64,000 nt of DNA from Macrostomum lignano (lineage: Eukaryota), in NCBI GenBank assembly GCA_002269645.1, contig NIVC01003638.1, positions 1 through 64,000 on the forward strand, read 5' to 3'. The first letter of the stretch is position 1. Every line of letters begins with the position of its first letter. Position numbers and translations under genes: made by a program. The notes under the pieces were generated by a model. The model worked only from the letters and a program-made list of their open reading frames with translations, had not been told where the DNA came from and did no database searches. Shown here piece after piece: positions 3,101 to 47,517 of the stretch.

Positions 3101-6100
3101 ACTGTTTGCTATACCAATTATTCGAAAATAAACGATAGCAAATACTACAACGAAGGCGAGCAGTAAAATAAAATGGAACAGGAGATGGCGGTTCAGAGGA
3201 CCATGACCAATATAGCTTGTGAGGTAGCAGATTATTGCTTATGTCTTTAGACATACAGCGCATAGCATGCGGGTAATAAATAAACAGCAGTATAAACAAC
3301 GATTTGAGAGCGGCAAGCAGCCTAGGAACGATGGGTTCATTCCTTGTCGCATCTATGATTAACTATATAGATGATGCAAGGCAAATCTGCTCAGAAAACA
3401 ATGACGCAATCGTAATGCCGATGATTGGTGCATAAAGCAGGTTAACATAGGTTAGCTACAAATTGTCGCCTCTAAACTTCAGGGAGCAGCTGGGGCTAGC
3501 TGATGAGGTGGGAGTGGACGGGAGTCTAGACTGCATCATCATGATTTCCAGCGCCAGATAAATAAATTTACAAGATGCTTGTCTTTTCTATTTCCTGTAA
3601 GTCACTAATCTCGATCATAGGTTTTTGATACTAAAAAATATTAAAAATTCTCAAAACTGTTTATTTAAACCTGATGCATAAAGCTGCGGCTCCCCAACAA
3701 CAGTGGGGATTATATACTTTCTAATCTGGGCGCTAAAAACCAGAACAGTATACAAAAGTTGCTTCGTTCGTTCTTGGCTAGGAAAATTGCAATTCTGTAG
3801 ACCATATGTATTGTATAAAAAATGAGACCTATACTGTATGCTTGCAAAGTCTTTCATATATGACGAAGCTACCGTAAAAATAGGCGCTCGTAATGGGTTT
3901 AGAAAAAGCGATAAGGGAGGGATCAGGCAAGTCAATTTAGTTGATGGGTGACTCTGCAATTCGAGGCATGGCAGAGCCGTTTGCTCGATCGCGAGGTTCG
4001 AAAAACACCTCCGAGATTACGGTTTTGGATAGCTATTGAGTTGTGGCAGTGCTTATCCTCACGGTACCGGAAGAATAAGAACTGTCTTTCTTGACTTGTC
4101 GGGATTAATCAAATAGAATTTTATTCTTATAATTGCTTAACTTCAAATTTTGAGTTGTATAAATAAACTTTACGGAGAATAATTTCGAATCGCCCACGAG
4201 TTTAAGTATAGCATGCTTCACCCCTTGATGCCTTTCCAATTGGCTTCATACATCACATTGTTCTCCTGGCATTTCGTATAGTGACTCAAACTGGTCGTGT
4301 GCCATTCGCAGCGCCTGGCATAGGTGTACGGATTGTAGTGCATGGCGCAGTAGGCGTACCTGGGATAGCAGGCGCTGGGGTCCCTGTCCAGGTTGTACCG
4401 GCAGGTGACCATATCTGTGCTGCCGACCCGGTCTCCAAATGAAGCAATCTGCGTGATTGAAAGTGTGCTGTGCTTTATTTTGCTTTTATCTCATAATATG
4501 AGCTGTTTAGTTTCCTAATAATTTGCTTCCTAATAATCAGTTTCTTAATCATCAGTTTCTTAATCATCAGTTTCTTAATCATCAGTTTCTTAATCATCAG
4601 TTTCTTAATCATCAGTTTCTTAATCATCAGTTTCTTAATCATTAGCTTCTTAATCATCAGTTTCTTAATCATTAGCTTCTTAATCATTAGTTTCTTAATC
4701 ATCAGTTTCTTAATCATTAGCTTCTTAATCATCAGTTTCTTAATCATCAGTTTCTCAATCATCAGTTTCTTAATCATTAGTTTCTTAAGCATTAGTTTCT
4801 TAATCATTAGTTTCTTAATCATTAGCTTCTTAATCATCAGTTTCTTAATCATCAGTTTCTTAATCATCAGTTTCTTAATCATTAGTTTCTTAATAATTAG
4901 CTTCTTAATCATTAGTTTCTTAAGCATTAGTTTCTTAGTCGTGAGTTTCTTAAGCATTAGCTTCTTAATCATTAGCGTCTTAATCATTAGCGTCTTAATC
5001 ATTAGCTGCTTAATCATTAGCTTCTTAAGCATTAGTTTCTTTATCATTAGTTTCCTAATCATTAGTTTCTTAAGCATTAGTTTCTTAGTCGTGAGTTTCT
5101 TAAGCATTAGCTTCTTAATCATTAGCGTCTTAATCATTAGCGTCTTAATCATTAGCTGCTTAATCATTAGCTTCTTAAGCATTAGTTTATTTATCATTAG
5201 TTTCCTAATCATTAGTTTCTTAATCATTAATTTCCCAATCATTGGTTTCTCAGTAATAAATTTCTCAAATCTCAATCATTAGTTTCTTAAGTTTTTGGGG
5301 TGCTCTCAAAAACTAGAACTTTTCTAGTTTCATAAATTACGAAATTTTTTGTTAACTGTATGGCAATGAAGATAATACCAAGCTGAGAAAATTAAAAATA
5401 ATAAGTCAAAGTAGTTGATAGATCGTGTCTGTAAACTTTGTCTGCTAAGTGCTAAACAACAGTCCGTACCATGCACACAGCTATAGCCAAGCCAATAACC
5501 TGAAATTGTTTTCACTCTCAAAGTCGCTCGCTGCAGGACAGACATCCAGTCTCCAAAGCCGGCCATTAGAATGACTTGAAAACTATTGTTATTGTCGCAT
5601 TGATATATGCATCGGATGTATCTATATCGTGCCGCTATCACTGCTCCCTGAATGTCACGCTGAAGTTAAAACGGGGGCAACCGCTGCCGCCAAGTCTAAC
5701 AGTCGAACTCTGCGACCACCGGGTAACGGCGGTACTTCATTCTTATCTGCGGCCCGGCCGGCCTCCCTACTAGTTTAGGTTGCTACCCTCAACCCCCCCC
5801 CACGTACCCAGCTCCTCCTTGAATCTCTTCCTCAGTTTCCGCAGCTTCTGTCTACCTACAGGCAGGGAGTCCGCTATAGCAGATTGGTACTGTTTAGCCT
5901 GTTGCACTGGCTGAGTCATCAATCAGGTTGGGAGGCCTGCTGCCCACAGTAACCCTAAAATTTAGCGTTACAGTCTGGGGAAGGCCTGTTTACACTAGCG
6001 TTAAGCGAAACTGGGGTCGTCTTTCTTTTCTAGAGAAGATATATGCCGCACCGCCGCTCCACTGGGCTGGTTAATCTGACGCTGCAGCCACTGGGCCATT

Positions 6101-9100: not shown

Positions 9101-12100
9101 CAGTTCCCAGTCAAGCGATTCGCGCAACGGCAACCAAGCCAGCCAACCTCTTGGCCAGCACCTCCCATACCCATATAATCCTCCTGGCCGCCTCCCCCTA
9201 TCCAACTGTCTCTGTTTATGGCGCTCTCTGGCAGCAACTGGCACCATAGATAGAAAAGCTGCACTTTCCTTGATTGGCTCCTAGGCCCTTTACAACCAAT
9301 ATTGTATTCAATTTTGCGTTTGAGGCTGTTTTTTTTATTCAACTGGTCTCAAAATTCAATATTGCTTTGGTTGTACGGACACTGAAACTGGTTGGCAATG
9401 CGCCAGCTGGGTGTGAGTGGGTGCTCAGGCGGAGGGGGCAGAATAAAAATCGATATGAAAAGGGGATAGAATTGAAGAAATACCCCACCCCAACAACCCC
9501 GCGCCCTCTCACTGTGCGGTGACAAAGCTGTTTTTAATGCCGGTCCCCTGTCTGCCCGTTCTTTGACGGGGTCAAGAGCGGCCGCATGCGTGCAGTCATC
9601 CAGGGACCTCTTTTATATTGCACCTAGATTGGAAAGCCCCTATGCTATTGTAAACCTTATGATGCCGTTGACACCACATGTTCTAAAATTAGTTAATGAA
9701 CTGGCTTTTCCTTTACCGGTAAATAATTAATTTGTTTATTCAATGTCCTATTGGCTTACGAAAAAACGAGGACTGAGACTGAATAAGTAGATCGGTGACT
9801 CATTGATTTTATGAATCTATTTTATCCTTCGCTGCTACACACTTTTCAGACACAATCCATAAGCTCCAAAAGAAAGATATGTACTTAAGATAAAAAATAA
9901 ACATAGAATATTAATTTTCTAAACGAAAAGCTTTATGAATATCAATAGAGCTATAAGAAAGGCAAGTCATATCAAACGATCAACACAGGGTCTGTCTCCA
10001 ATAAAAAAAAAACGAATTTTGTGCTGAAAATGAAAACTACGTCTCTTAGAAAATGTTTTTGAGGCTGGTTTTCACTACGGAGATAGGAAGTTTTCTTTTT
10101 CAGCACAAAAATTGTTATTGCTTTCAATAAGAGGCAGAGGCATCATTTTATATATTGTGCCTTTCTTATTGTTCTATCGATATTCATAAAGCTTCTCGTT
10201 CTGAAAGTTAAGATTCTATGTTAATTTTGTATTCTACTTACAGTGGTACATGTCCTGTGCTTAAAAACCATTAAAATTCACGGTTTGGATCTTTGGTTTT
10301 ATGAATCTATAATGACTTTTGTGCTGAATGAATGAAAAGTCTCCCATCTCCTAAGTGTACTATTAGCGAAAACCAGCCTCATAAACATTTTCCAAGAAAT
10401 ATAGTTCCCTCCTCCTACTTGAGTAGTCTTTGATTCATGCACATAAGAACTGCCTTGCTAAGAATTAAATTAACAATAACGCGACTCATAAAAATTGCTT
10501 GATAATTGTTTCCAGAACATGTCTCACGACACCTACCCTCTGGTGATGAAGATCGGCCACGCTCATGGCGGCCTTGGCAAGGTAAGGCGCATCAATCACC
10601 TATACCCGTAGTCCAAATCTCGTAATCACATTTGGTCACAATGCTTTGGTCACAATGCTGACTCTCTCCCGGTGTGTTTTTTCTGAATGATCTACTCAGT
10701 TTTTTGAGACAAATTTCTTCTTGTTCAAGTCGCATTTTGGGTAAAGCGTGCTTCATTTTATACGACTGCTCTATCCTAAACTTAAATACTAAGATTTTTC
10801 TGATAACATTTATATCTAGCTTGCTAGTCTACTGAAAGTAGTCAGAAAAGAATCCGGAAAGTCTATCGTTCCAACTATAAAATTTACTTTTATAGATTCG
10901 CCTCGCCAGACCAGACGAATTGCAGGATCTGTCGGGGGTGGTGGCCGTGGCAAATACTTACGCCACCACCGAGACTTTGGTGGACTCAAAATTCGACATT
11001 CACATACAGAAGATTGGAAATAATTACAAAGCCTTCCTGTGAGTTGCTGAACTGGGAACTGGGGGACTGGGGAACTGGGGAACTGGGAACTGGGGAACTG
11101 AGGGACTGGGAACTGGGGGACTGGGGAACTGGGGAACTGGGAACTGGGGAACTGGGGAACTGGGGAACTGGGGACTGGGGAACTGGGGAACTGGGAACTG
11201 GGGAACTGGGAACTGAGGGACTGGGAACTGGGGGACTGGGAACTGAGGGACTGGGAACTGGGGGACTGGGAACTGAGGGACTGGGAACTGGGGGACTGGG
11301 GAACTGGGGAACTGGTAACTGGGAGACTGGGGGACTGGGGAACTGGGGACTGGGGAACTGGGGAACTGGGAACTGGGGAACTGGGAACTGAGGGACTGGG
11401 AACTGGGGAACTGGGGAACTGGGGAACTGGGGAACTGGGGAACTGGGGAACTGGGGAACTGGGGAACTGGTAACTGGGAGACTGGGGGACTGGGGAACTG
11501 GGGACTGGGGAACTGGGGAACTGGGAACTGGGGAACTGGGAACTGAGGGACTGGGAACTGGGGGACTGGGAACTGAGGGACTGGGAACTGGGGACTGGGG
11601 AACTGGGGAACTGGGGAACTAGGGGACTGGGAACTGGGGGACTGGGGAACTGGGGAACTGGGGGACTGGGAACTGGGGACTGGGAACTGAGGGACTGGGA
11701 ACTGGGGAACTGGGAACTGAGGGACTGGGAACTGGGGACTGGGGAACTGGGGGACTGGGGAACTGGGGAACTGGGGAACTAGGGGACTGGGGAACTGGGG
11801 AACTGGGGGACTGGGAACTGGGGAACTGGGGAACTAGGGGACTGGGAACTGGGGACTGGGGAACTGGGGAACTGGGGGACTGGGAACTGGGGGACTGGGA
11901 ACTGAGGGACTGGGAACTGGGGACTGGGGAACTGGGGAACTGGGGAACTGGGGGACTGGGGAACTGGAGAACTGAGGGACTGGGAACTGGGGGACTGGGG
12001 AACTGGGGAACTGAGGGACTGGGAACTGGGGGACTGGGGAACTGGGGGACTGGGGAACTGGGGAACTGAGGGACTGGGAACTGGGGGACTGGGGAACTGG

Positions 12101-14024
12101 GGAACTGAGGGACTGGGAACTGGGGAACTGAGGGACTGGGAACTGGGGGACTGGGGAACTGGGGAACTGGGAACTGGGAGACTTTGGTGCCAATCTGAAT
12201 GATGGACTGCGATTTCAAAGATAGCAGGATGCACCTACAGCTGAACTGAAGCTTTTACTCACTTTTCATTTTTTCTGTTAACTCAGGCGCAGAAGTATCT
12301 CGGGCGGCTGGAAAGCCAATGTGAGCTCCTCGATGCTTGAGCAGCTTCCAATGACTGACAGGTGAATGATCAAATGATAAAATACGTTTCAAAATGCTAA
12401 AACATGCAGCAGTTTGTTATAATGAAGCTTGAATTTTTCTACCAGATTTCGTTCTTGGATTGACGAGGTTGCTCAACTGTTTGGCGGCATGGACATCTGC
12501 TCTGTGGAGGCCGTGCAAAACAAGGAGGGCGCCGTGTTGATTGTTGAAGTGAGCTTACTGGGATGCCTTCCCAGACTTGAACTTCACGTTTCCCTACTGG
12601 ATTCCAATCTACCCAACTCGATTCCAGCCTACCCAACTCGATTCCAATCTACCCAACTCGATTCCAATCTACCCAACTCGATTCCAGCCTACCCAACTCG
12701 ATTCCAATCTACCCAACTCGATTCCAGCCTACCAAACTCGATTCCAGCCTACCCAACTCGATTCCAGCCTACTCAACTCGATTCCAATCTACCCAACTCG
12801 ATTCCAGCCTACCAAACTCGATTCCAGCCTACCCAACTCGATTCCAGCCTACTCAACTCGATTCCAATCTACCCAACTCGATTTTAATCTACCCAACTCG
12901 ATTCCAATCTACTCAACTCGATTCCAATCTACCCAACTCGATTCCAATCTACCCAAATCGATTCCAATCTACCCAACTCGATTCCAATCTACTCAACTCG
13001 ATTCCAATCTACTTAACTCGATTCCAGCCTACCCAACTCGATTCCAATCTACCCAACTCGATTCCAATCTACTCAACTCGATTCCAATCTACTCAACTCG
13101 ATTCCAGCCTACCCAACTCGATTCCAATCTACTCAACTCGATTCCAGCCTACTCAACTCGATTCCAATCTACTCAACTCGATTCCAATCTACTCAACTCG
13201 ATTCCAATCTACACAACTCGATTCCAATCTACCCAACTCGATTCCAATCTACCCAACTCGATTCCAATCTACCCAACTCGATTTTAATCTACCCAACTCG
13301 ATTCCAATCTACTCAAATCGATTCCAATCTACCCAACTCGATTCCAGCCTACCCAACTCGATTCCAATCTACCCAACCAATTCCAACCGAGAGAATGTCT
13401 TGCTAGTATCTCCAGAAAATTACCTCTTTCACCCGAAACGAACCCGAAAATCACCAGGCCAACGGGTCGGACGCGCCGCTGCTCGGCGACTCGCAGGAGG
13501 AGGACCGGCGGCTCATCTCCGAGCTGGTGCTGGGCCGGATGCATCACGCCTGCTCAGCGGCCGCTGCCCGACTCAGCCGGGCGGGCAGCCTCGGCCAGGG
13601 AATCAACCGCTATTCTGCCACCCCCAACGGACCGACTCAGCCGCAGCCTCCGCCACCGCCGATGCCGCAGCAGCAGCAGCAGCAACAGGCCGCGGCGGCG
13701 GGAGCAGCGGCGGCTTCGATGATAAAGCAGCCGATGCCCCCGCCGCAGTCGGCGCCATCAGTCGGAGCTGCCGCCTCCGCTGGACCTCCGCCGCCATCGT
13801 CTGGACCGCCGCCGCCGCGGTCTGGCGGGCCGCCGCCTCCGCCTCCGCCGCAGCAGCCGCCTGGAGGCGGCCCCCCGGGGGGAGCGGCCAGACCGCCGCC
13901 GCCGCCGCGCCAGACGTCGCTGCCTCGGGGCCCGGGCGGCGGCCCCGGCGGAGGCGGCGAGGAAGGCGAGGACACGATGAAGAACCTGCGCAAAACATTT
14001 GCAGGAATTTTTGGGGACATGTGA
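198..14024 (+). CDS. Syn: Synapsin, 5'-partial. Exons 198-287, 10516-10581, 10896-11038, 12287-12361, 12446-12548, 13458-14024 (stop).
   Basis: AG/GT-bounded exons splice with consistent phases (0,0,2,2,0). They give FTHLAQIQTRVGKENFPLVEQAFYPKYQDL|NMSHDTYPLVMKIGHAHGGLGK|IRLARPDELQDLSGVVAVANTYATTETLVDSKFDIHIQKIGNNYKAFL|RRSISGGWKANVSSSMLEQLPMTDR|FRSWIDEVAQLFGGMDICSVEAV...VE|ANGSDAPLLGDSQEEDRRLISELV. This is recognisably the synapsin C (ATP-grasp-like) domain. It is followed by a Pro/Gln-rich D region and the terminal E domain EDTMKNLRKTFAGIFGDM*. The N-terminal exons lie before the window. Confidence 0.95.
2290..2583 (-). mobile_element. Possible tRNA-derived SINE fragment
   Basis: The minus strand from 2583 to 2515 reads GCGGTAGCCTATAGTAGTCAAGAGTGGCGCTCTAATGTGCCAGCGGCCCAGGCTCGATTCCAAG, with A-box-like (TAGCCTATAGTAG) and B-box-like (GGCTCGATTCC) motifs at tRNA-like spacing. 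I could not build a full cloverleaf, and the 3' limit is a guess. Confidence 0.4.
4218..8582 (-). CDS. Timp: Tissue inhibitor of metalloproteinases (TIMP), nested antisense in a synapsin intron. Exons 8582-8258, 8153-8041, 7950-7809, 7646-7471, 4448-4218; about 328 aa from the first ATG.
   Basis: Five exons with canonical GT/AG sites and matching phases (1,0,1,0). They give CLCRPHNPHHPQQAFCASQF|ALKVKIRR...LYQVLIKSVFRN...|...DVCG...SYLVT|GNF...SKCSWVAFW...QSRYLRGGVYENSCLKCQ|IASF...TCRY...SACYPRYAYC...RRCEW...TKCQE..KG*. TIMP hallmarks present: C-x-C start, HPQxxxC, CG, YLxxG, CxW, YxxxCxxC, and 12 Cys in the mature part. An AATAAA lies about 100 nt past the stop (around 4120). Confidence 0.92.
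4505..5295. repeat. 15-bp tandem array (TTCTTAATCATYAGY)n in TIMP intron 4
   Basis: Direct reading, about 50 units. It explains the KKLMI ORF at 4475-5275. Confidence 0.95.
9063..9111. repeat. Short (CCCAGTT)n tract, the reverse complement of the 11050-12180 array
   Basis: ccccagtgtccagtccccaactcccagttcccagttcccagttcccagt. Confidence 0.8.
9901..10395. repeat. Degenerate interleaved inverted repeats (foldback/MITE-like remnant)
   Basis: 9901-9964 is an imperfect reverse complement of 10158-10221. 10046-10077 is an imperfect reverse complement of 10364-10395. Confidence 0.7.
11050..12180 (+). repeat. G-rich 7-8-bp array (GGGAACT / GGGGAACT / GGGGGACT / GAGGGACT)n in a synapsin intron
   Basis: Direct reading. 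It starts about 12 nt after the donor at 11039. Confidence 0.95.
12599..13377. repeat. 20-bp tandem array (ATTCCAATCTACCCAACTCG)n in the last synapsin intron
   Basis: Direct reading, about 39 units. Confidence 0.95.
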
Positions 14025-15784
14025 GACTGAGCTCGGTCTGGCGACCTGCGGCTGTTTTGGCCGGAATCTGCGGTACTGGATGAACTTTAATTGGCATTAG
14101 AAGTTTTGTCTTGCTGAGCATGCTGATGAAGATGTGCCCAAAAGACAGGTTAGAACGGGCAGGCAGTTTGACTGAAACCGAAAACCGCCCACTCGCATAA
14201 TATTGTTTTTATGTTTTATGTAATATATTTTACTTATATTTTAATGTTTTTATTCAATGGCTATTTTTTGTTAGAATTTTAGTATCAATTTGAGTTGTAA
14301 CCAACTTTTCTTCGCCTAGCCCAGCATAATAATAATTTTAGAATGATTATATTAATTATAGTATACTTGTTTACAGTCTGATTTGTTCGAAAATATTAAT
14401 CACAATTCTATAGCACCAGATTCTTAAATAGGCCTGGCACATGTACTTTTTCTTGCTTAGAGGGAACGGTTCTAAAAGGATTAAGGCGGCACAGTTGACC
14501 CACTGACCCGTGACTGGACCCCTGAGCACACACAGGTACGCACTTAACTAAACAGGGTATGTGTTCAGCTGCACCTGACTTTCTAATCATCGAAAATACT
14601 GGGTGATCCTTGACTGTAATTCATGCACAGCCACTCTTGGCTTAGTAATATCTGACCCATAATAATTAATAAAGTGCATAAATTTGTCAGTAAAACACTG
14701 GCTCACCATATTATATTCCTATTTTCACCAACTGCTGGCAATCCAAGCCAAATGCAATTATTGATTTCTAATTGTAGCTATAGGCTTTTCTATTCAGCTG
14801 CGTTCAACGAATGTCTAAAAAGTGCACGTTGTACCTTTTTAAATCTGTTTACGCTCTGGTTTGAACAGCAATTTTTTTGAATTTATATATAATCGATTGT
14901 TTTTGCTTTGGTGGCATAATACGGCTCTGGTTGTTATGAATCCATGCAAGGACTACATGTATTCTTATACATTGTATGCACATTAAAAAACGTGTATTCA
15001 TATTCATGTATTTATAAAATATTAATAATTTATATTTTATTATTTTATTTTATTATTTTTTATTATTTAATAATGTAATACTTGTAATTTATCAATGTTT
15101 AGTTTATTGTACCAATGGCCGTTAAGTCGTAGAAATTTGCAATATTTTTGTTCTCAATCAATCCAGCATAATTCGATAATCATAATGAAAACTTATGTTT
15201 GAGTCGTCTGGGAAGCGACAAATTTCGATAGCTCATAACTATTTGTAGTTTCTCATCTTGGTTTACAGCAGACATTTATATTTTTCCTTTGAACGTTTTA
15301 ACAAAATATTTCGATGTTGTTAATCAATTGTGTATTTCTAAGAAATGCAATAGCTATTAAAACAAATTTATGCAAAAAGTTTTATTTTGTTTTATCATTT
15401 TTAACGATAGTTTACTTTACCATTGCAAATGCGGTATGTCGCTGCGGCTTGGCGGTCGTGGAAAACTCGTTGGTGCATTTTTCTATTAGCTCCCATAAAC
15501 CAAGCTGGACAAACACTCCGTACACTCCTATATATCTAATTAGCAGGATATCGCTTAGCTTTAGAATCTTACTAGACCATTTTATGTCTGTAGCTAGTCT
15601 CTTAACGATTGCCGATTTAAAAAATACATTTTAATTTGCAATTGCGCTTACTAAATATATATTATGCATTATACACAAATATTTATAGAGCCTTTTTCTT
15701 GCAAATTGTGAACTGCGAAATTGAAGAATGCTTTCAGACTATTGCTTATTTTACAGCGGGGGTAATGCAGGTGCTAATCCGACC

Positions 15785-16232
15785 ATGGTGTGTGCTTGCC
15801 TATGGTTGCCATGGTGTGTGGTTACCTATGGTTGCTATGGTGTGTGCTTGCCGATGGTTGCTATGGTGTGTGCTTGCCTATGGTTGCTATGGTGTGTGGT
15901 TACCTATGGTTGCTATGGTGTGTGTTATAGTGGTTGCTATGGTGTGTGTTATAGTGGTTGCTATGGTGTGTGTTATAGTGGTTGCTATGGTGTGTGTTAT
16001 AGTGGTTGCTATGGTGTGTGTTATAGTGGTTGCTATAGTGTGTGCTTGCTTATGGTTGCTATAGTGTGTGTTATAGTGGTTGCTATGGTGTGTGTTATAG
16101 TGGTTGCTATAGTGTGTGTTATAGTGGTTGCTATGGTGTGTGTTATAGTGGTTGCTATAGTGTGTGCTTGCTTATGGTTGCTATAGTGTGTGTTATAGTG
16201 GTTGCTATAGTGTGTGTTATAGTGGTTGCTAT
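15785..16232. repeat. 24-bp tandem array (GGTTGCTATGGTGTGTGTTATAGT)n
   Basis: Direct reading. It explains the VAMVCVIV and GCYGVCYS ORFs. Confidence 0.9.
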
Positions 16233-16600: not shown

Positions 16601-17530
16601 TGACTTTACCAAATATGAAGTGACTGCTACTAAAACTTGAAATTAATAAGGCTAAGCTACATGTATCGCCCACAAGACAGTGTGAAGTCGGATCACAGTG
16701 TGTACAGTTTATTGATTTTTTGAAGCGCGGGAAGAAGTCACGCCATCTATAGACGAAAAATCTGAATTTTATTTCAAAGTATAGTAAGTACTCATAAGTG
16801 TTTGTCTGTCCATCCAGACCATGTATATGGGTTGATGGGGGGTTTCTTTCGCTAAATAATGCTAAGTTTTGTTTGAACTATAAATAATCAGTTATTTGGC
16901 CGAAAGAAGCAAAAGCACAACAGCAAGCAACAGAGAAGCAAAAGCAACTACACGTAAATAATGAAAAAGAAAAAATGTACACAAAAAAATTAAAAAGCGA
17001 CAAATTTACAGACAATGAGTTTTGGAATTCTGACAAATTTTAAATTGGAATAGATTGGACAACATGCAACTAAGGCATGGATAGATGCTACAAAACTCTT
17101 AAGGTCTTGCTTGAGTAGAAAATCCGTTGAAATTGTGTACTTTGACCCATGGTTGGGGATTTTTACATCAATCTCACTAACTCTACGAGACGGCTTGAGA
17201 TCGCGGAGTGACCTGCACATCTTCGGTTTATACAATTCTTGGAACAGAAACTCTTTAATAAGGCTAAATACGCTGTCTTCTTCTGAATAATCGAATCTTA
17301 GAGAATGGCTTACGCATCAGGCGCATAATTTGCGTCCAGTTGTTGTAGCACTGGAATATTTCGAATAGCGTCCGTGTGACGAATGCTGAAGCATAGTGGC
17401 ATAAGGATGGTCTGTTCTGTAGTCAAGCTCTTAGCTCCTATGTCCACTGTAACACCCGAGAGTACAGTAGAAGAAAATCAACTGACACTTCTTACAAATT
17501 GAACTGAATTCAACGCTAGTGCAATACAAA

Positions 17531-19038
17531 CTAAAGCTGTGTGATTTCAATATCCTCTGGCATCTCAACAGCCCGAACAGTAACCAGGGAGCGACGTTGA
17601 AGCAGCTCCTCCTGCTGCTCCTGGACGAGAAAATCTGACTCGCTTGACGAATTTGACTTGTCAGCCTCAATCTGAAACACGTAGGCGGGGTTTGGACAAA
17701 TTTTCGGGCTGTGTTCGGTGGAGCCTGCAGTCAGCCGGTGGTTCGCTGAAGGACTCGAATAGAGGCAGCTTTCAACGCGTTCTCCCTCGGCGCGCATCGC
17801 CCGCAACTCCTGATCCATCAGACTGAACACTGACGACAGCAGCTGCGGATTAGCGTGAAACTGCGGCGCTAGGAGGTTATTGCGCTTCAGGCGCTCCTCC
17901 CAGTGCGGCGGCAGGTTGACAAATTGTTCGGCCTCGCGATCGTAGACCAGGCTCAGCAGCTCCCGAGGCTGTCGCGGCGGCGGTGTCGGCGGCGGCGAAC
18001 CGGCATCATCTTCATCGTCCGTATTGCCTTCGCCAGCTCGCTGCTGCAGTGGCGGCTCTGCTGCTTCCGCTGCTGTTGCTTCCGCTGCAGGTACAGTTGC
18101 TGAGGCCGGGACCTTATTTAAAAAAGATGCTGTCGTTTTGCTTACACTACGTAACTATTCGCTCTGGCCCTACTTTTGTAATCCATGTTCTGTTCTGTCA
18201 TAAAATTCCACAATGTCTACAAGACCAAAACGTCAACTCCTGGAAGTAAAAGAGCCATGACACCCTTACGTAAATGCTTGCGGACTCGTGGCATGCTTAC
18301 GAAAAAAACGAGCACGGAGATCCTACAGAGCCTACCTACAGACCCCATACCCTACAGAAAGCAAGGGCAAGCCATGAACTCGTGCCTGTTTGCGTTACGC
18401 GTGGCATGGACTTGCTCGGGAAATGCGGCGTACGAGCGTAATTAGAGAAACTATCTTCCAACTCCAGCGCATTCCAAGAAGTGTGCAGGACTCAGTCTGT
18501 TACAAGAAAACTAGAATAAGTATACTCAATCGCATTTTCAGAATGATGTAAGATTTCTTCTCACCTGTTCTGCTGGTGAGACTGGTAACGGCTCTTCACT
18601 AATTGATTCAGTCGCCATTGCAGCTCGTTCCTCCTCTCCAGGTTCTTCTTCAATGACTGACATGGTGATCAAAGGAGCTGCTTCTGCTGCTGTTGCTTCT
18701 GCTCCTGTTGCTGCCGTTGCAGGTATAGTTGCTGTCGAAGATGATATCGACTGATCAGTGTTGCTACCCGCTGGTTGGGCCTCGAAGTACTGCCGCCAAT
18801 TCTCGGGTATCCCGTCAAAGCCTTGACTACCCGCATTGAAAGTGATGTGCATCACCCGCTTCACGTTCTGCGGCGTTGAAATTCGACGACCACCTTTGCT
18901 GGAGCCGCTGCTGCCGTCGTCGCCGCCTTCACTGCTACCGTCGCCGCTGCTGCTGCCTTTGCCACCACCGCGATTCCTGCGCTTAAATAGCGACGCTATG
19001 GAGTCTCGGACACTGTCCAGCTTCTTTGTGGAAGACAT
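17531..19038 (-). CDS. Kinase-less PAK-regulatory-region-like protein with two PBD/inhibitory-switch modules. Exons 19038-18565 and 18112-17531; about 351 aa.
   Basis: Exon 1 is 474 nt and ends CAG|GTGAGA. It encodes ISTPQNVKRVMHITFNAGSQGFDGIPENWRQYF, which is CRIB/PBD-like. Exon 2 follows TAAG, is 582 nt in phase 0 and open to TAG. It encodes DDEDDAGSPPPTPPPRQP and LVYDREAEQFVNLPPHWEERLKRNNLLAPQFHANPQLLSSVFSLM. An ATTAAA lies at about 17254-17259. An additional upstream exon cannot be excluded. Confidence 0.75.
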
Positions 19039-20483: not shown

Positions 20484-20786
20484 TCAGATCTTGATGCAGC
20501 TGATCAGCTTGATAGCGTTGCCGCCGCAGTTGGTGGCAAAGCAGTTGGCCATGCGAACTGGGTCGAAGCCGTTGGACAGCGCACAGCCGTATATGCTGTT
20601 GATGATGCAGCTGAGCGAGCTGATGCCGGCCTGACGGATGCACTCCATGTCGACGCTGATGAAGGGCATGACCTCTTGGATGAGATCGTTGATGACTTCG
20701 TCCTGCTGTTGGACAGTGTAGGCGGCTGATGCGGCCGACGCCATGGCTAGGACAGCCAGCAGGTAGCTCAGAAGCTTCGTGTACAT
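20484..20786 (-). CDS. Small intronless secreted six-cysteine protein (100 aa), family unknown
   Basis: ATG at 20786 to TGA at 20484 with GC3-rich codons. The signal-peptide-like N-terminus is MYTKLLSYLLAVLAMASAASA. The Cys pattern is C-x10-C-x7-C-x13-C-x4-C-x9-C. AATAAA lies at 20443-20438, about 40 nt past the stop. Confidence 0.8.
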   Translation of the reverse strand: MYTKLLSYLLAVLAMASAASAAYTVQQQDEVINDLIQEVMPFISVDMECIRQAGISSLSCIINSIYGCALSNGFDPVRMANCFATNCGGNAIKLISCIKI

Positions 20787-23700
20787 TCTTGATTTTGCAA
20801 ATATATATCGGTGCGGAAGTTGCAGAACTGTGGAATTCTGTTTTCGGAACTTACATGTATCGGCCCGCATTGGATTTTATATGTAGAGTGGCAGAGGAGA
20901 ATGGCGCCATGGAGCTGCAGCTGACGAAATTCTCGGCTCCCATGGAAATTTAGCATGCACAATTAACTGGACAGAAAGCAATTATTGCCTCATTTTGTGC
21001 TGTTGCTAAAGGGCAAACTGCATGTTTCTTAATTGTCCATTGTGACTTAATGTATAGATCTTGGGTGGCAGCAGAATACTAAACAGTAAAAAACTTGGGC
21101 TCTGGTCCGCGATGAGAACTTAACACACGTTGCAGGAAAAAATAGCTGGCTGGTCGAGTGATTTCAAAGCAGATTTCGCGGCAGTGTAAAAGAGATAACC
21201 TCAAACTCAAATGAGTCCGCTTCCCACGATCACATCTGGTTAATTGTTGCCGGGTGTAATTGGGAATTGCGTGCCGTTTCGCTTGACTTAACGAAGTAGA
21301 ATTATCCATCGAGAAATGCTATGCGTCTTTATTAAACTGGCTAAAATAACAGAGATCCATGAATAAATGAAATGTGAAATATTGCATGTACATAAATTTA
21401 GTGAAAAGTTGTACACATCAAGAAGAGTTTGCATATGCAGATTTATGTTGTAGTCATATAGGCATATATAACATTGTGACGTAACCACGCTCTGGTCGCG
21501 GGATAGGGCATGGGAACTTTTTCGAAGGTGCCTCCTATCCCGTGCACCTCCCCTGCGCAGAGCTGTCGAGACTCGGTCAGGTCTCCGGCCAGGCCTGGAG
21601 AGACTCCCGCTCTGCTGCACCCTCCTGCTGCCTTGGCTCCGTCTCCCCTGCCGCCACACCTGCCTTTACGCAGCTCCCTATCCCTCTCTGTACCTCCCCC
21701 TCTACCTTATCTCCCCTGCGCTCCACCCTAGTCTTCTTGTACTTTCCCCATCCCCCCTCTTTTTGTCTCTCTCTGCACTATTTTCCTGCGCTGTCCCCTC
21801 TTTCTCTGCGTCTACTTACAGTATGTTGTGCTCACCGACCTCCCATCCCTTCCCAAACTCCCAAACGGTGACGCAAGTCGTGTGACCCCTTCTTCCCCTC
21901 GATGACTCATCGATGACTCATCCCCCTCTCTTGCGCAACCTTTTCTCATGCTATTGTTCTCCTCCCCAAATTTCTCATGCGACACCCACCCCACCTCCGC
22001 TTCTATTGTTCTCGTTTTTGATTCTTTTGTTCTCTTTACCCCCACCAATTATCACATTTTCTCCGATTTTCTCTTTCTATTGTTCTCGTTTTCGCACCTA
22101 ATTATCACCTTTTCTCCAATGTCCTCTCTCTCTCTCTCTGTGCAGCTGCCTGTAAGTTCCTGTTACTGATTTGTGCTCTAATTGCCTTTGCTTATCCGGA
22201 GTTTGCCTATTTTTCCATTGTCTGATTCGAGGGCTGAGCCAGTTGTGATACCGTACCTTTTGCTGTATTTTTACTCAATAGTGAAGCCGCCTAATTGCCT
22301 GATTATTTGCCTAAGGGCCTAATTATTAACTATTAACTAACCTCATCATTATTCACTCTTTCACCATCATTTCACCCATGGCTTGCTAAGCCTTTCTCCC
22401 GGGGTTGCAAAGCATAAGGAAGTTTGGGTAAGCTAATGGCCTCTCCCCGTGCAAAGCTCGCCTGTGAGTGCGTGCTGCGGGGCCGCGTGTGCGTGCAGTA
22501 GAGGGATTAGCGAGTCTTGGCACAGAATGGCAGCAGGAAGGTTGCAACCCCATGCTGACGCGTCCCTTCGCCTTGAGCAATCTAAACTAGAGACAGTACA
22601 TGTTCGCCTCATACTACTCTTAGTAATCAAAGTCGCAAGTCCGCCTCGCTCACAGCCACAAAGGATCCCCTGCTGAGAAATCCTCCAGATTGAGCCCAGA
22701 GTTCCCGATCATGCCCCCAAGCAGAGTCCCTGTACTCGGCTGCATGTGTCTCCCCTGTTAGCCTAAATCTCCTGGTAACCATCCCAGGCGGGGCTCTAGC
22801 CTCGAGAGGTCTGGTAGAAAGATCCAGGTGCGCCAGGTCACATAGAGTGGTGGCAGCCACTCGGTCATACTATGACCGAGTGACCAACTATTGCACCTTG
22901 GCTACAGGTGGGGTCCATGTGGGTCTTTGGCCCTCTGGTCACAAAGCGCTACCAATTAAGCTATCAATCATGTGGGCGGGACAGTCTGGTGCTGGAGGTC
23001 CGTCAGGTCATTGCCCAGTCATAGGCAGCCTACGGTCATTGCCCCCTCTGGTCATGCGTTCGTCTCTCTACGGAGCGGACAGGCGACAAGGGCGGTTACA
23101 TCAATTGATTTATATTGAGTGCAAGGTAAGCTGCGCGCAAATTCCATACAGTAAAATACCAGAGAGAAGTATTTGAATTGCCATGTATGAACATGCTACA
23201 GAATTTCCAAATCAACCGGCCTATATATATAAATACAGGCTCGCTCAAGGATAAAGTGTTATGCGTGATATATGTACATTAGGGATCCGGTCCGAGACTT
23301 GTACATACTGCAGTACATAAATCTATTTACAAGTACTCTCGTACAAGTTACATATTCCGAACTTGCACACGCATGAATTATACCAGTATTTAAGCTGTTG
23401 AAAATTAGTTGAATTCAGAATAGCAAATTTGCCTAAAGAGAGCTGGGGGACCTATATCGCTCGTCTTTTTTCATTTCATAATTAAGTTTTGTGAAATTTA
23501 GGTCTTATCGGCACCTTTTAATCTTCAAACGCAAAATAATTAGTAAACTGCTGTTCCTTTTTAAAGTATCGTCCGACAAGTTGATATTTGTCAGGGCCAT
23601 TGTTATACGTATGTTGTAACGTATTGAACTGCATATTTAACATAAAATATTAAATTTTAGTAAAAATAAGAGATCAAAAAGTTTTTTATTTTGGTTAATG

Positions 23701-44889: not shown

Positions 44890-45795
44890 TGCCCACTCCA
44901 ATGTACACCCACCCACTCCAATGTACACCCACCCACTCCAATGTACACCCGCCCACTCCAATGTACACCCGCCCACTCCAATGTACACCCACCCACTCCA
45001 ATGTACACCCACCCACTCCAATGTACACCCACCCACTCCAATGTACACCCGCCCACTCCAATGTACACCCACCCACTCCAATGTACACCCGCCCACTCCA
45101 ATGTACACCCACCCACTCCAATGTACACCCGCCCACTCCAATGTACACCCGCCCACTCCAATGTACACCCACCCACTCCAATGTACACCCGCCCACTCCA
45201 ATGTACACCGCCCACTCCAATGTACACCCACCCACTCCAATGTATACCCACCCACTCCAATGTACACCCGCCCACTCCAATGTACACCCACCCACTCCAA
45301 TGTACACCCACCCACTCCAATGTACACCCACCCACTCCAATGTACACCCACCCACTCCAATGTACACCCGCCCACTCCAATGTACACCCACCCACTCCAA
45401 TGTACACCCGCCCACTCCAATGTACACCCGCCCACTCCAATGTACACCCGCCCACTCCAATGTACACCCACCCACTCCAATGTACACCCGCCCACTCCAA
45501 TGTACACCCGCCCACTCCAATGTACACCCACCCACTCCAATGTACACCCACCCACTCCAATGTACACCCGCCCACTCCAATGTACACCCGCCCACTCCAA
45601 TGTACACCCGCCCACTCCAATGTACACCCACCCACTCCAATGTACACCCACCCACTCCAATGCACACCCACCCACTCCAATGTACACCCGCCCACTCCAA
45701 TGTACACCCACCCACTCCAATGTACACCCACCCACTCCAATGCACACCCACCCACTCCAATGCACACCCACCCACTCCAATGTACACCCACCCCT
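44890..45795. repeat. 20-bp tandem array (CCCACTCCAATGTACACCCR)n downstream of the DIP2 stop
   Basis: Direct reading, about 45 units. Confidence 0.95.
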
Positions 45796-46594: not shown

Positions 46595-47095
46595 AAAGAT
46601 TGGGATTGTGAAGCTGGAGGGTTGTGAAGATTGGGATTGTGAAGCTGGGGTGTTGTGAAGATTGGGGATTGTGAAGATTAGGGATCGTGAAGTTTGGAGA
46701 TTGTAAAGATTGGGGATTGTGAAGCTTGGGGATTGTGAAGATTGGGATTGTGAAGCTGGAGGGTTGTGAAGATTGGGATTGTGAAGCTGGGGGTTGTGAA
46801 GATTGGGATTTTGAAGCTGGGGGTTGTGAAGATTGGGATTGTGAAGCTGGTGGTTGTGAAGATTGGGATTGTGAAGCTGGTGGTTGTGAAGATTGGGATT
46901 GTGAAGCTGGGGTGTTGTGAAGATTGGGGATTGTGAAGATTAGGGATTGTGAATGTTGGGGATTGTGAGGATTAGGGATTGTAAAGATTGGGGGTTGTGA
47001 AGATTGGGGATTGTGAAGATTAAGGATGTTAAAATTGGGGACTGTAAAGAATGGGGACTGTGAAGCCTGGGATTGTGAAGATTGGGGATTGCGAA
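46595..47095. repeat. Degenerate 15/30-bp array (GATTGGGATTGTGAAGCTGGGGGTTGTGAA)n
   Basis: Direct reading. Confidence 0.85.
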
Positions 47096-47517
47096 GCTCG
47101 AATAGTCGAAGAACCCACTGTGGAAATGCTACCGTTGAACCATCGCTGTCTGTGGCATTTATGATCGAAGCTAGAAAATCGGGCAACACATTTACATCTC
47201 GGTCAAAGCCAGGCAAATGTTGCTGAATAAGTTAAATGCTAAAATGTTAGGAACAATTTCTGCATGGCTGTTAAACCGTGAACATCCTGGTGACATTTAG
47301 CTGACTCCTGGCGCCTGCACGGCAACCCCATTTGTCAAGGTATATAATTTCGAACTTCACTTTAGCTATGAAATGCGTCGCGCTCAGCATTGCATTGTAA
47401 CAAAACTGTTGGCCTGTGCAGGTATACGCAGTCACACTCGTGCCTTTCCTACCTTCATTGCGCAAAACTTTGTGCGGCTTGAGAAAGCGATGGCGTTGTC
47501 AGATCTAGCGGCCTCGC

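What the first reader, a model, noticed from the sequence alone, without database searches (positions are those of the whole stretch)
17531..19038. Kinase-less protein with two tandem PAK-type PBD/autoinhibitory modules: a candidate stand-alone PAK inhibitor or Cdc42/Rac adaptor
Seen in sequence: a two-exon ORF of about 351 aa. Module 1 (ISTPQNVKRVMHITFNAGSQGFDGIPENWRQYF) follows a basic patch. Module 2 (LVYDREAEQFVNLPPHWEERLKRNNLLAPQFHANPQLLSSVF) follows an acidic run and a PxxP motif (DDEDDAGSPPPTPPPRQP). Established knowledge: in group I PAKs the CRIB is followed by an inhibitory switch of the form GFDxxTGEFTGMPEQWxRLLxxSNI...NPQAVLDVL. Further downstream PAK1 has an acidic stretch, the PIX-binding PPPVIAPRP and SVIEPLPVTP, which is echoed here by SISEEPLPVSP. 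Seen: the ORF stops at 17531 with an ATTAAA downstream, and I find no kinase exons between here and the synapsin 3' end. Module 1 has lost the first CRIB His and the Phe, and module 2 lacks ISxP, while both keep inhibitory-switch residues. Inference: this is a PAK-derived regulatory-only protein that could inhibit PAK kinase domains in trans, possibly independently of GTPase release. I do not know a described family with this architecture.
Basis: partly seen in the sequence, partly recalled or inferred. Interest (0 to 1): 0.75.

Follow-up and report, generated by a model that had tools for sequence, protein, structure and literature searches.

The report
Kinase-less flatworm protein with duplicated PAK-type PBD
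This is a real, transcribed gene of the flatworm Macrostomum lignano. It encodes a small, mostly disordered protein built from two copies of the GTPase-binding and autoinhibitory region of PAK kinases, with no kinase domain. It is most likely a Cdc42/Rac adaptor, and a role as a PAK inhibitor is possible but unproven.

Summary
The two-exon, 351-aa ORF (19038..18565 + 18112..17531, minus strand) is real. It is identical to GenBank PAA50429.1 (Macrostomum lignano BOX15_Mlig032438g3, "CRIB domain-containing protein"), a gene model derived from RNA-seq.

- **Module 1 (aa 52-88):** a clear Pfam PBD/CRIB match at 37.5 bits.
- **Module 2 (aa 208-268):** a truncated PBD lacking ISxP. It scores below threshold here (14-16 bits) but 24 bits (cut-off 21.3) in paralogue Mlig019290. 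Its profile's best PDB hit is the PAK1 autoinhibitory fragment 1F3M_A, residues 85-129, gapless, E 0.009.
- **Internal repeat:** the two modules are homologous to each other (hhalign E 3e-6).
- **No kinase:** no kinase exon lies in the 64-kb window or within 10 kb of six paralogous loci. Synapsin converges from downstream.
- **Family:** only three paralogue groups were found, and every named member is from Macrostomum.
- **Selection:** the conserved blocks are under purifying selection.

The "PAK-derived, kinase-less regulatory protein" reading is supported. Trans-inhibition of PAK is untested, because no KI segment is recognisable and the fold evidence is inconclusive. My best reading is a Rho-GTPase-regulated SH3 adaptor. 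It is a new variant of the known class of kinase-less CRIB effectors, of moderate interest.

The parts
17531..19038 (-). Whole gene, ATG to stop: Macrostomum lignano BOX15_Mlig032438g3, 351 aa, two coding exons
   Evidence: The translation is identical to PAA50429.1, and window coordinates equal coordinates of contig NIVC01003638.1.
18565..19038 (-). Coding exon 1 (aa 1-158)
   Evidence: The start is conserved with paralogue B (MSSTKKLDS / MSTFNQKLDS). There is no in-frame ATG upstream.
18976..19029 (-). Conserved N-terminal helix followed by a basic patch (TKKLDSVRDSIASLFKRR)
   Evidence: Conserved in all paralogues. Predicted helix at aa 4-21, pLDDT about 60. A role in membrane or partner binding is inferred only.
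18775..18885 (-). Module 1: CRIB + beta-hairpin + first helix (RISTPQNVKRVMHITFNAGSQGFDGIPENWRQYFEAQ), PBD profile positions 1-37
   Evidence: Pfam PF00786 at 37.5 bits, E 3e-9. A family profile hits PAK CRIB chains 1EES_B, 1F3M_A and 1E0A_B at E 2e-5 to 1e-4. I53, S54, P56, H64, G76, P78 and W81 are invariant in the family.
18574..18606 (-).
   Evidence: Present but absent from paralogues B and C and variable between copies (L151F). Probably not a constrained motif.
18113..18564 (-). Intron (GT..AG, 452 nt)
   Evidence: Stops in frame. Non-3n indels between copies occur here only. Paralogue B is colinear across this point within a single exon.
17531..18112 (-). Coding exon 2 (aa 159-351 + TAG)
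17966..18019 (-). Acidic run and proline motif DDEDDAGSPPPTPPPRQP. The PxxPx[R/K] core is conserved in all paralogues.
   Evidence: The motif reads PPTPPPR (A, P0005), PPTPPSR (P0006) and PLTPPK (B). SH3 binding is inferred from the class II consensus (established knowledge) and was not tested.
17783..17965 (-). Module 2: truncated PBD without ISxP, comprising hairpin + helices (RELLSLVYDREAEQFVNLPPHWEERLKRNNLLAPQFHANPQLLSSVFSLMDQELRAMRAEG). F222, W229 and L233 align with PAK1 F96, W103 and L107.
   Evidence: Pfam PBD positions 17-51 at 13.9-15.6 bits here. The paralogue B equivalent scores 24.0 bits, above the cut-off. The profile's best PDB hit is 1F3M_A chain residues 16-60, gapless, E 0.009, and the five best hits are all PAKs. 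hhalign against module 1 gives E 3e-6. The AF2 model shows hairpin + helices at pLDDT 65-71.
17633..17683 (-). Conserved Tyr/acidic/Ser-rich block YVFQIEADKSNSSSESD
   Evidence: Conserved between paralogues A and B. Function unknown; the acidic Ser cluster is a possible phosphorylation region (inference).
17567..17596 (-). Conserved C-terminal basophilic motif RRSLVTVRAV (B: RRRPSLVRMRAV; C: RQQRSFVRD)
   Evidence: S333 and V335 are invariant. It resembles a PAK-type substrate or docking motif (Arg upstream, Ser, then L/F-V). Compare the PLV core of the PAK4 AID and the Inka1 iBox (PMC4674680). This is inference only.
17254..17259 (-). ATTAAA candidate poly(A) signal, 272 nt after the stop
   Evidence: Usage was not verified.

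Best explanation
The gene encodes a small, largely disordered, kinase-less effector/adaptor of Rho-family GTPases. It arose by internal duplication of a PAK-type p21-binding domain.

Shown: two PBD-derived modules sit in one polypeptide, there is no kinase, the gene model is RNA-seq-based, and the conserved blocks are under purifying selection.

Inferred mechanism:
1. The N-terminal helix and basic patch, together with the CRIB-bearing module 1, bind a GTP-loaded Cdc42/Rac-like GTPase at the membrane.
2. The conserved PxxPx[R/K] motif recruits an SH3 protein of the Nck, Grb2 or PIX type.
3. Module 2 has a hairpin plus inhibitory-switch-like helices but no ISxP. It acts as a regulated protein-protein interaction or fold-back element.
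4. Module 2's most likely partners are PAK-pathway components.

The protein therefore tunes Cdc42/Rac-PAK signalling without catalysis of its own.
For: Gene model:
- The translation equals PAA50429.1.
- That annotation was built from RNA-seq (StringTie/TACO/TransDecoder; PMC5730564).

Domains:
- PBD scores 48.4 bits for the whole protein. Module 1 scores 37.5 bits.
- Module 2 is a partial PBD. It scores 24.0 bits in paralogue B. Its best PDB hit is PAK1 1F3M_A at E 0.009, and the five best hits are all PAKs.
- Module 1 and module 2 align at hhalign E 3e-6.

Architecture independent of the splice:
- Paralogue B carries both modules in one exon, with its intron elsewhere.
- P0005 is an uninterrupted 259-aa ORF with both modules on a 990-nt contig carrying an AATAAA.

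No kinase:
- tblastn of the PAK1 kinase domain against the window and seven related loci gives nothing better than E 5.9.
- The downstream neighbour is a convergent synapsin gene.

Selection:
- The three copies of paralogue B show 0 nonsynonymous and 3 synonymous changes in 861 nt, against 1.2-2.2% intron divergence.
- In the window gene's three copies, all 11 nonsynonymous changes fall outside the blocks conserved between paralogues, which cover 43% of residues (binomial P 0.002).
- The only coding indel is in frame.
- PxxPx[R/K], the N-terminal helix and the C-terminal RxS[L/F]V motif are conserved.
Against: - No binding data exist.
- The CRIB lacks the Phe and the first His of the consensus (F->V, H->R, invariant in the family). 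Canonical Cdc42/Rac binding may therefore be weak or redirected.
- Structure models are low-confidence (pLDDT 42.9 for the whole protein, 62.8 for module 2) and Foldseek matches are not significant.
- Whole-gene dN/dS among the three copies is 0.4-1.1, so much of the protein is weakly constrained.
- No expression or phenotype data were found.
Confidence: 0.5

Rival explanations
1. Stand-alone PAK inhibitor. Module 2 is a functional inhibitory-switch domain that binds the catalytic domain of a group I PAK in trans and holds it inactive. Because the CRIB sits in a separate module, inhibition is uncoupled from, or differently coupled to, GTPase binding.
For: - Module 2 aligns without gaps to PAK1 residues 85-129. 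It keeps the equivalents of F96, P100, W103, L107, N111 and N120-P121-Q122.
- PAK1 autoinhibition works in trans, and the isolated residue 83-149 fragment is an established trans-inhibitor (established knowledge; the region is cited in PMC11852631).
- There is a precedent for a kinase-less protein with two copies of a PAK autoinhibitory mimic: Inka1 with PAK4 (PMC4674680).
- A conserved C-terminal R-x-S-[L/F]-V motif resembles a PAK substrate or docking site.
Against: - The KI segment (PAK1 residues 136-149, including Lys141) has no recognisable equivalent by inspection.
- The positions that align with PAK1 E116 and D126 hold Q and S in module 2.
- AF2 predicts one long helix rather than a compact three-helix IS domain, at pLDDT about 63. 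Foldseek does not retrieve 1F3M.
- The sequence match is marginal in this protein (14-16 bits).
Confidence: 0.22
2. Bivalent GTPase binder or sequestering factor. Both modules contact Rho GTPases: module 1 through the CRIB, and module 2 through the hairpin/helix that in PAK complexes packs on the switch regions. The protein clusters or buffers active GTPases rather than acting on PAK.
For: - Both modules share the hairpin + helix part of the PBD.
- The best, though non-significant, structural matches of both models are PAK4 CRIB peptides bound to RAC3 or CDC42. For module 2 the rmsd is 1.0 A over 21 columns.
- Multi-PBD, apparently kinase-less proteins exist. P0007 has four tandem PBDs scoring 154 bits, and Dictyostelium GnrC has two CRIBs (PMC8847673).
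Against: - Module 2 lacks ISxP and both His residues, which supply most of the CRIB-GTPase affinity (established knowledge).
- The Foldseek E-values of 1-7 are not evidence.
Confidence: 0.12
3. Non-functional remnant: a partial duplicate of a PAK 5' region, or a mis-annotated PAK fragment whose kinase exons lie elsewhere.
For: - Overall dN/dS among the three near-identical copies is not clearly below 1 (0.39, 0.48 and 1.08).
- More than half of the protein is low-complexity linker.
Against: - ORFs are intact in 3 + 3 genomic copies plus P0005, with an in-frame indel only.
- Paralogue B shows 0 nonsynonymous changes against diverged introns.
- Nonsynonymous changes avoid the conserved blocks (P 0.002).
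- Three paralogue groups at 35-50% identity keep the same block order and a conserved C-terminus with a stop.
- No kinase exon lies within the window or within 10 kb of the paralogues.
- A convergent synapsin gene lies downstream.
- The gene model is RNA-seq-derived.
Confidence: 0.04

Closest known systems
Group I PAK regulatory region (PAK1 residues 70-149: CRIB/PBD overlapping the inhibitory-switch domain; PDB 1F3M chain A)
   Same: Module 1 aligns with PAK1 residues 75-110 (ISxP...H..F.....F.G.P..W). Module 2 aligns without gaps with residues 85-129, covering the hairpin, F96, P100, W103, L107 and NPQ at 120-122. A basic patch precedes the CRIB, and an acidic run and a PxxP motif are present, as in PAK N-termini.
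   Different: There is no kinase domain. The PBD is duplicated and split, so the CRIB and the IS-like helices lie in separate modules about 120 residues apart. The CRIB has F->V and H->R. No KI segment is recognisable.
Inka1/Inka2 (FAM212A/B), endogenous PAK4 inhibitors
   Same: They are kinase-less, mostly unconserved proteins whose only conserved parts are two copies of a motif resembling a PAK's own autoinhibitory segment (iBox and iBox-C; PMC4674680). This is the closest precedent for the proposed mode of action.
   Different: The iBox is a pseudosubstrate peptide (RSRQPLVL) for group II PAKs and does not affect PAK1. Inka proteins have no CRIB or PBD. There is no sequence relationship here: Pfam reports only PBD.
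Kinase-less CRIB effectors: BORG/Cdc42EP, SPEC/CDC42SE, plant RICs, yeast Gic1/2
   Same: They are small, largely disordered proteins with an N-terminal CRIB preceded by basic residues, and they act as GTPase-regulated adaptors.
   Different: From my own knowledge, those have a single, canonical CRIB with both His residues and family-specific motifs (BH1-3 in BORGs). None has a second PAK-type IS-like module. No BORG domain was detected by Pfam here.
Other endogenous PAK1 inhibitors (CRIPak, Merlin, Nischarin, PAK1IP1/hPIP1, SKIP)
   Same: They would share the proposed function of negative regulation of group I PAK (PMC11852631).
   Different: None is derived from the PAK autoinhibitory domain. 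They have unrelated folds (zinc fingers, FERM, WD40 and others).
Multi-PBD proteins (Dictyostelium GnrC with two N-terminal CRIBs; metagenomic P0007 with four tandem PBDs)
   Same: They carry tandem PAK-type PBD repeats outside a kinase context (PMC8847673).
   Different: Their repeats are complete canonical CRIBs. Here the second repeat has lost the CRIB core and kept the downstream helices.

Membership tests
Pfam PBD / CRIB-domain proteins (PF00786) | Whole-protein score at or above the gathering cut-off of 21.3 bits | tested here: met
   The whole protein scores 48.4 bits, and module 1 alone scores 37.5 bits.
Pfam PBD / CRIB-domain proteins (PF00786) | Full CRIB consensus I-S-x-P-x(2-4)-F-x-H-x-x-H-V-G | tested here: not met
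   Module 1 reads ISTPQNVKRVMHIT. I, S, P and the second His are kept, while F->V, first H->R and VG->IT. These substitutions are invariant in the family. Module 2 lacks ISxP and both His residues.
Pfam PBD / CRIB-domain proteins (PF00786) | GTP-dependent binding to Cdc42/Rac | not testable with these tools
   This needs pull-down or ITC with GTP-loaded GTPases.
p21-activated kinases (PAK/STE20) | Ser/Thr kinase domain C-terminal to the PBD in the same polypeptide | tested here: not met
   The stop codon is at 17531-17533. tblastn with the PAK1 kinase domain gives no hit better than E 5.9 in the 64-kb window or in L001-L007 (query validated at 617 bits to PAK1). The RNA-seq-based CDS ends at the same stop.
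Group I PAK inhibitory-switch (IS/AID) domain | Sequence homology across PAK1 residues about 87-136 | tested here: inconclusive
   The module 2 profile hits 1F3M_A residues 85-129 at E 0.009 and the five best hits are all PAKs. Paralogue B's module 2 scores 24.0 bits, above the cut-off. The window protein's own module 2 scores only 13.9-15.6 bits, and the match stops before helix 3 and the KI segment.
Group I PAK inhibitory-switch (IS/AID) domain | Kinase-inhibitory segment (PAK1 residues 136-149 with Lys141) following the IS helices | tested here: not met
   No alignable segment was found by inspection of the alignments. The downstream conserved motif is E-G/L..L/V-D/E...Y/H-S-S, at a different spacing.
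Group I PAK inhibitory-switch (IS/AID) domain | Compact hairpin + three-helix fold as in 1F3M chain A | tested here: inconclusive
   AF2 of module 2 (pLDDT 62.8) gives a hairpin, two short helices and one long helix. Foldseek against the PDB finds no significant match and does not list 1F3M.
Group I PAK inhibitory-switch (IS/AID) domain | Inhibits the PAK catalytic domain in trans | not testable with these tools
   This needs a kinase assay or a complex prediction. Only monomer prediction was available.
BORG / Cdc42EP | BORG homology domains after the CRIB | tested here: not met
   hmmscan against Pfam-A at E<=10 lists only PBD and a spurious Calpain_III match.
Inka (FAM212) PAK4 inhibitors | Inka box (iBox) with an RSRQPLVL core | tested here: not met
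   There is no Pfam match other than PBD. The C-terminal RRSLV motif has Ser, not Pro, at the P0 position.

The most novel reading that the evidence does not exclude
A Macrostomum-restricted family of natural, stand-alone group-I-type PAK autoinhibitory proteins. The IS-like module 2 clamps PAK catalytic domains in trans. The separate, divergent CRIB (Val/Arg in place of Phe/His) and the PxxP motif decide where and when the clamp is delivered. This would be the first endogenous PAK inhibitor derived from the PAK autoinhibitory domain itself, and a natural counterpart of the laboratory PID (residues 83-149) tool.
Probability: 0.2. Interest if true: 0.7.

Novelty: new variant of a known kind. 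Interest (0 to 1): 0.42.

Why it matters
Kinase-less CRIB adaptors are well known, and PAK autoinhibition by the IS domain is textbook. A naturally occurring protein that carries a PAK-type IS-like module without the kinase, with the CRIB duplicated out into a separate module, has not been described as far as I could find.

If module 2 inhibits PAK in trans, it would show that evolution reached for group I PAKs the solution that Inka1 represents for group II. It would also give a genetically tractable model of GTPase-uncoupled PAK inhibition, since M. lignano has RNAi and transgenesis.

If the protein is only an adaptor, it is a lineage-specific addition to the Cdc42/Rac effector repertoire, of interest mainly to flatworm biologists.

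Tried and rejected
1. **Word-indexed homologue searches.** The full-protein search returned only the protein itself, probably because low-complexity words saturated the candidate list. A trimmed three-sequence alignment and the module 2 + C-terminus fragment returned nothing, not even the protein itself. These two are uninformative, not evidence of absence. The family census rests on the exhaustive phmmer run.
2. **P0008.** This hit is a 429-aa repeat protein with no PBD-like modules, carried on a 3.3-Mb contig. I treated the match to 'TFNSGSQTFD..P.GW' as chance.
3. **Whole-CDS dN/dS among the three copies.** There are too few changes (11 nonsynonymous, 6 synonymous) and the values are 0.39-1.08. 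I replaced it with the intron-versus-CDS contrast in paralogue B and the positional test.
4. **Foldseek.** No significant hits for the whole model or the module 2 model, so the IS fold could be neither confirmed nor excluded.
5. **Expression data.** The gene identifiers occur in no indexed paper or in the supplements searched. The source run of P0005 (SRR28338165) is not mentioned in any paper, so its species is unknown.
6. **The 'SISEEPLPVSP = PAK1 SVIEPLPVTP' echo.** Rejected as a constrained motif.
7. **P0009.** This 1450-aa UniRef model contains the paralogue C segment. It has no Pfam domain and reads as a fused ab initio artefact, and it contains no kinase.
Full report
**What is there**

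The window is the first 64 kb of Macrostomum lignano contig NIVC01003638.1 (assembly GCA_002269645.1), and window coordinates equal contig coordinates. On the minus strand, an ATG at 19038 opens a 474-nt exon ending at 18565 (CAG|GTGAGA). A 452-nt intron with in-frame stops follows. A second exon runs from 18112 (after ...AAATAAG) to the TAG at 17533-17531.

The 351-aa product is identical over its full length to GenBank PAA50429.1, 'hypothetical protein BOX15_Mlig032438g3'. UniRef names it 'CRIB domain-containing protein'. The GenBank annotation of this assembly was made from a genome-guided RNA-seq assembly (StringTie/TACO, TBONE, TransDecoder; PMC5730564). An ATTAAA lies 272 nt past the stop.

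**The two modules**

- **Whole protein.** Pfam PBD (PF00786) scores 48.4 bits (cut-off 21.3) in two stretches.
- **Module 1 (aa 52-88).** It matches profile positions 1-37 at 37.5 bits. It aligns with PAK1, PAK4 and PAK6 CRIB peptides from solved complexes.
- **CRIB core of module 1.** ISxP, the second His, and the G.P..W helix start are kept. The consensus Phe is Val and the first His is Arg. Both substitutions are invariant across the family.
- **Module 2 (aa 208-268).** It has no ISxP/HxxH and matches profile positions 17-51 at only 13.9-15.6 bits.
- **Why module 2 is nevertheless a real PBD remnant.** Three results raise it above chance:
  - The equivalent module of paralogue Mlig019290 scores 24.0 bits on its own, above the cut-off.
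  - A three-sequence profile of module 2, searched against all PDB sequences, has the PAK1 autoregulatory fragment 1F3M_A as its best hit (E 0.009). The match is gapless and corresponds to PAK1 residues 85-129 (chain residues 16-60, with numbering from the deposited 70-149 fragment). The five best hits are all PAKs.
  - Profile-profile comparison of module 1 with module 2 gives E 3e-6 over the hairpin and first helix.
- **Conclusion.** The two modules are an internal duplication of a PAK-type PBD. Copy 1 kept the CRIB N-terminus. Copy 2 kept the helices that in group I PAKs form the first part of the inhibitory switch.
- **Residue equivalences.** F222, P226, W229, L233, N237 and N246-P247-Q248 correspond to PAK1 F96, P100, W103, L107, N111 and N120-P121-Q122.

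**No kinase**

tblastn with the human PAK1 catalytic domain found nothing better than E 5.9 in the whole window on either strand. It also found nothing in the 10-kb flanks of the two other copies of this gene or of the three copies of paralogue B. I wrote the query from memory and then validated it at 617 bits over its full length against PAK1 structures.

Downstream, the last synapsin exons run on the plus strand at about 12.4-14.0 kb (Synapsin_C 66.8 bits; C-terminus ...NLRKTFAGIFGDM*). They converge on this gene. Upstream lie a 118-aa ORF and, divergently, DIP2.

**Family and constraint**

An exhaustive phmmer search of 1.84 billion representative proteins found only these relatives:
- **Paralogue B:** Mlig019290, 286 aa, 50% identity.
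- **P0005:** 259 aa, on a 990-nt Logan contig from SRR28338165, with an uninterrupted ORF and an AATAAA.
- **P0006:** M. lignano, from an older annotation, lacking module 2.
- **P0007:** an unrelated metagenomic protein with four canonical PBDs.
- **P0008:** a chance hit (a 429-aa repeat protein with no PBD-like modules).

All family members share the same order of blocks: N-terminal helix, basic patch, module 1, variable linker, PxxPx[R/K], module 2, a Y/H-S-S motif, and a C-terminal R-x-S-[L/F]-V motif.

In paralogue B both modules lie in one exon and the intron is after aa 229. The two-module architecture therefore does not depend on the splice predicted here.

Evidence for selection:
- The three genomic copies of paralogue B encode identical proteins. 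They differ by 3 synonymous and 0 nonsynonymous changes in 861 nt, while their introns differ by 1.2-2.2% plus indels.
- The three copies of the window gene differ by 11 nonsynonymous changes, 6 synonymous changes and one in-frame codon.
- Whole-gene dN/dS for those copies is uninformative (0.39-1.08).
- None of the 11 replacements falls in the blocks conserved between paralogues, which make up 43% of residues (binomial P 0.002).

The gene is therefore not a decaying fragment. Constraint is concentrated on the modules and short motifs, as expected for a disordered adaptor.

**Structure**

AlphaFold2 with the shallow family alignment gives a low-confidence model (mean pLDDT 42.9). Both modules come out as a beta-hairpin followed by a helix. 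Module 2 continues into further helices, and an N-terminal helix spans aa 4-21. Module 2 alone reaches pLDDT 62.8.

Foldseek against the PDB gives no significant match. The top rows are PAK4 CRIB peptides bound to RAC3 or CDC42, and 1F3M is not retrieved. The IS-fold question stays open.

**How it most likely works**

Shown: a transcribed, selectively maintained, kinase-less protein made of a duplicated PAK-type PBD plus a conserved proline motif.

Inferred, best reading (about 0.5): module 1, with the preceding basic residues, binds an active Rho-family GTPase. The PxxPx[R/K] motif binds an SH3 protein. Module 2 is a regulated interaction or fold-back element. Together this makes a GTPase-controlled adaptor in the Cdc42/Rac-PAK pathway.

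- **For:** the residues that align include the L107 equivalent. PAK1 autoinhibition acts in trans. Inka1 shows that nature has made a kinase-less protein with two copies of a PAK autoinhibitory mimic, for PAK4 (PMC4674680).
- **Against:** the KI segment is missing, the match is marginal in this protein, and the fold prediction is inconclusive.
- **Context:** the known endogenous PAK1 inhibitors (CRIPak, Merlin, Nischarin, PAK1IP1, SKIP) are unrelated to the PAK AID (PMC11852631). If the inhibitor reading were true, this would be a new kind of PAK1-type inhibitor.

The conserved C-terminal RRSLV / RRRPSLV / QRSFV motif looks like a PAK-type substrate or docking site. This is inference from the Arg(-2/-3) and hydrophobic +1/+2 preferences discussed. 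It is a second, weak link to PAK.

The EPLPVSP 'echo' of PAK1 is not conserved and varies between copies. A PIX-type PPxxxPR reading fits paralogues A and P0005 but not B or P0006. Only PxxPx[R/K] is general.

**Verdict**

- The structural and evolutionary interpretation is supported.
- The mechanistic interpretation is untested.
- This is a new variant of the known class of kinase-less CRIB effectors. At the sensitivity reached, it appears restricted to Macrostomum.
- Interest is moderate.

Noticed in passing
window 12426-12551 (+) and about 13460-14030 (+); TIMP at <=8582 (-): The last exons of a synapsin gene lie on the plus strand (Synapsin_C profile positions 135-202, 66.8 bits; C-terminus ...EDTMKNLRKTFAGIFGDM*). 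A TIMP/NTR gene lies on the opposite strand at <=8582. This appears to be the nested TIMP-in-synapsin arrangement known from Drosophila and vertebrates (from memory), here in a flatworm. Upstream synapsin exons were not mapped, so nesting is not proven.
   Followed up: partly
window about 24182 to >40000 (+): A DIP2 (disco-interacting protein 2) gene of about 1669 aa, with DMAP_binding plus two AMP-binding domains, is transcribed divergently from the CRIB gene. The same neighbours flank all three copies of the locus.
   Followed up: partly
window 20484-20840 (-): An annotated 118-aa ORF lies 1.4 kb upstream on the same strand. It has a signal-peptide-like N-terminus (MYTKLLSYLLAVLAMASAASA) and several Cys residues, and no Pfam match. 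It is annotated in two of the three copies. It could share a trans-spliced transcriptional unit with the CRIB gene.
   Followed up: partly
window 44892-45793, 46596-47096, 47519-51973: Three adjacent satellite arrays: 20 bp x 45, 16 bp x 32, and 42 bp x 106 (4.5 kb). The last one produces stop-free 'ORFs' of about 1500 aa in several frames, which are artefacts rather than genes.
   Followed up: yes
window 10819-12254, 12553-14080 and 15788-16232: Further tandem or low-complexity repeats. There are Pro/Ser/Gln-rich repeats on both strands at 10.8-12.3 kb and a 'PTRFQSTQLDSNLPNSIPIY' repeat at about 12.6-13.4 kb, which lies between the two mapped synapsin exons. A 24-bp array (x17) lies at 15.8-16.2 kb between synapsin and the CRIB gene.
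   Followed up: no
window 4478-5275 (both strands): A K/L/M/I-rich repeat gives a 266-aa ORF with a strong but surely compositional Pfam 'HC2' hit (90 bits).
   Followed up: no
L001-L003 and L005-L007 (M. lignano contigs NIVC01003638, 2221, 0158, 0102, 0886): Both paralogues exist as three about 98-99% identical syntenic copies. This fits the duplicated karyotype and assembly redundancy described for the DV1 line (PMC5730564). Two copies of paralogue B lie about 100 kb apart on one contig, in opposite orientation.
   Followed up: partly
P0007 (JGI metagenome contig, 1064 nt): A 296-aa partial protein of unknown eukaryotic origin carries four tandem canonical PAK-type PBDs (154 bits, four stretches) and no kinase in the part seen.
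   Followed up: no
P0006 / P0009 (UniRef A0A1I8GLP4, A0A1I8IU88; older M. lignano annotation): The models of a third paralogue in the older M. lignano annotation lack module 2, which its closest relative P0005 retains. It is unclear whether this is a skipped exon, an isoform or a mis-prediction. P0009 is a 1450-aa fused artefact with no Pfam domain.
   Followed up: partly
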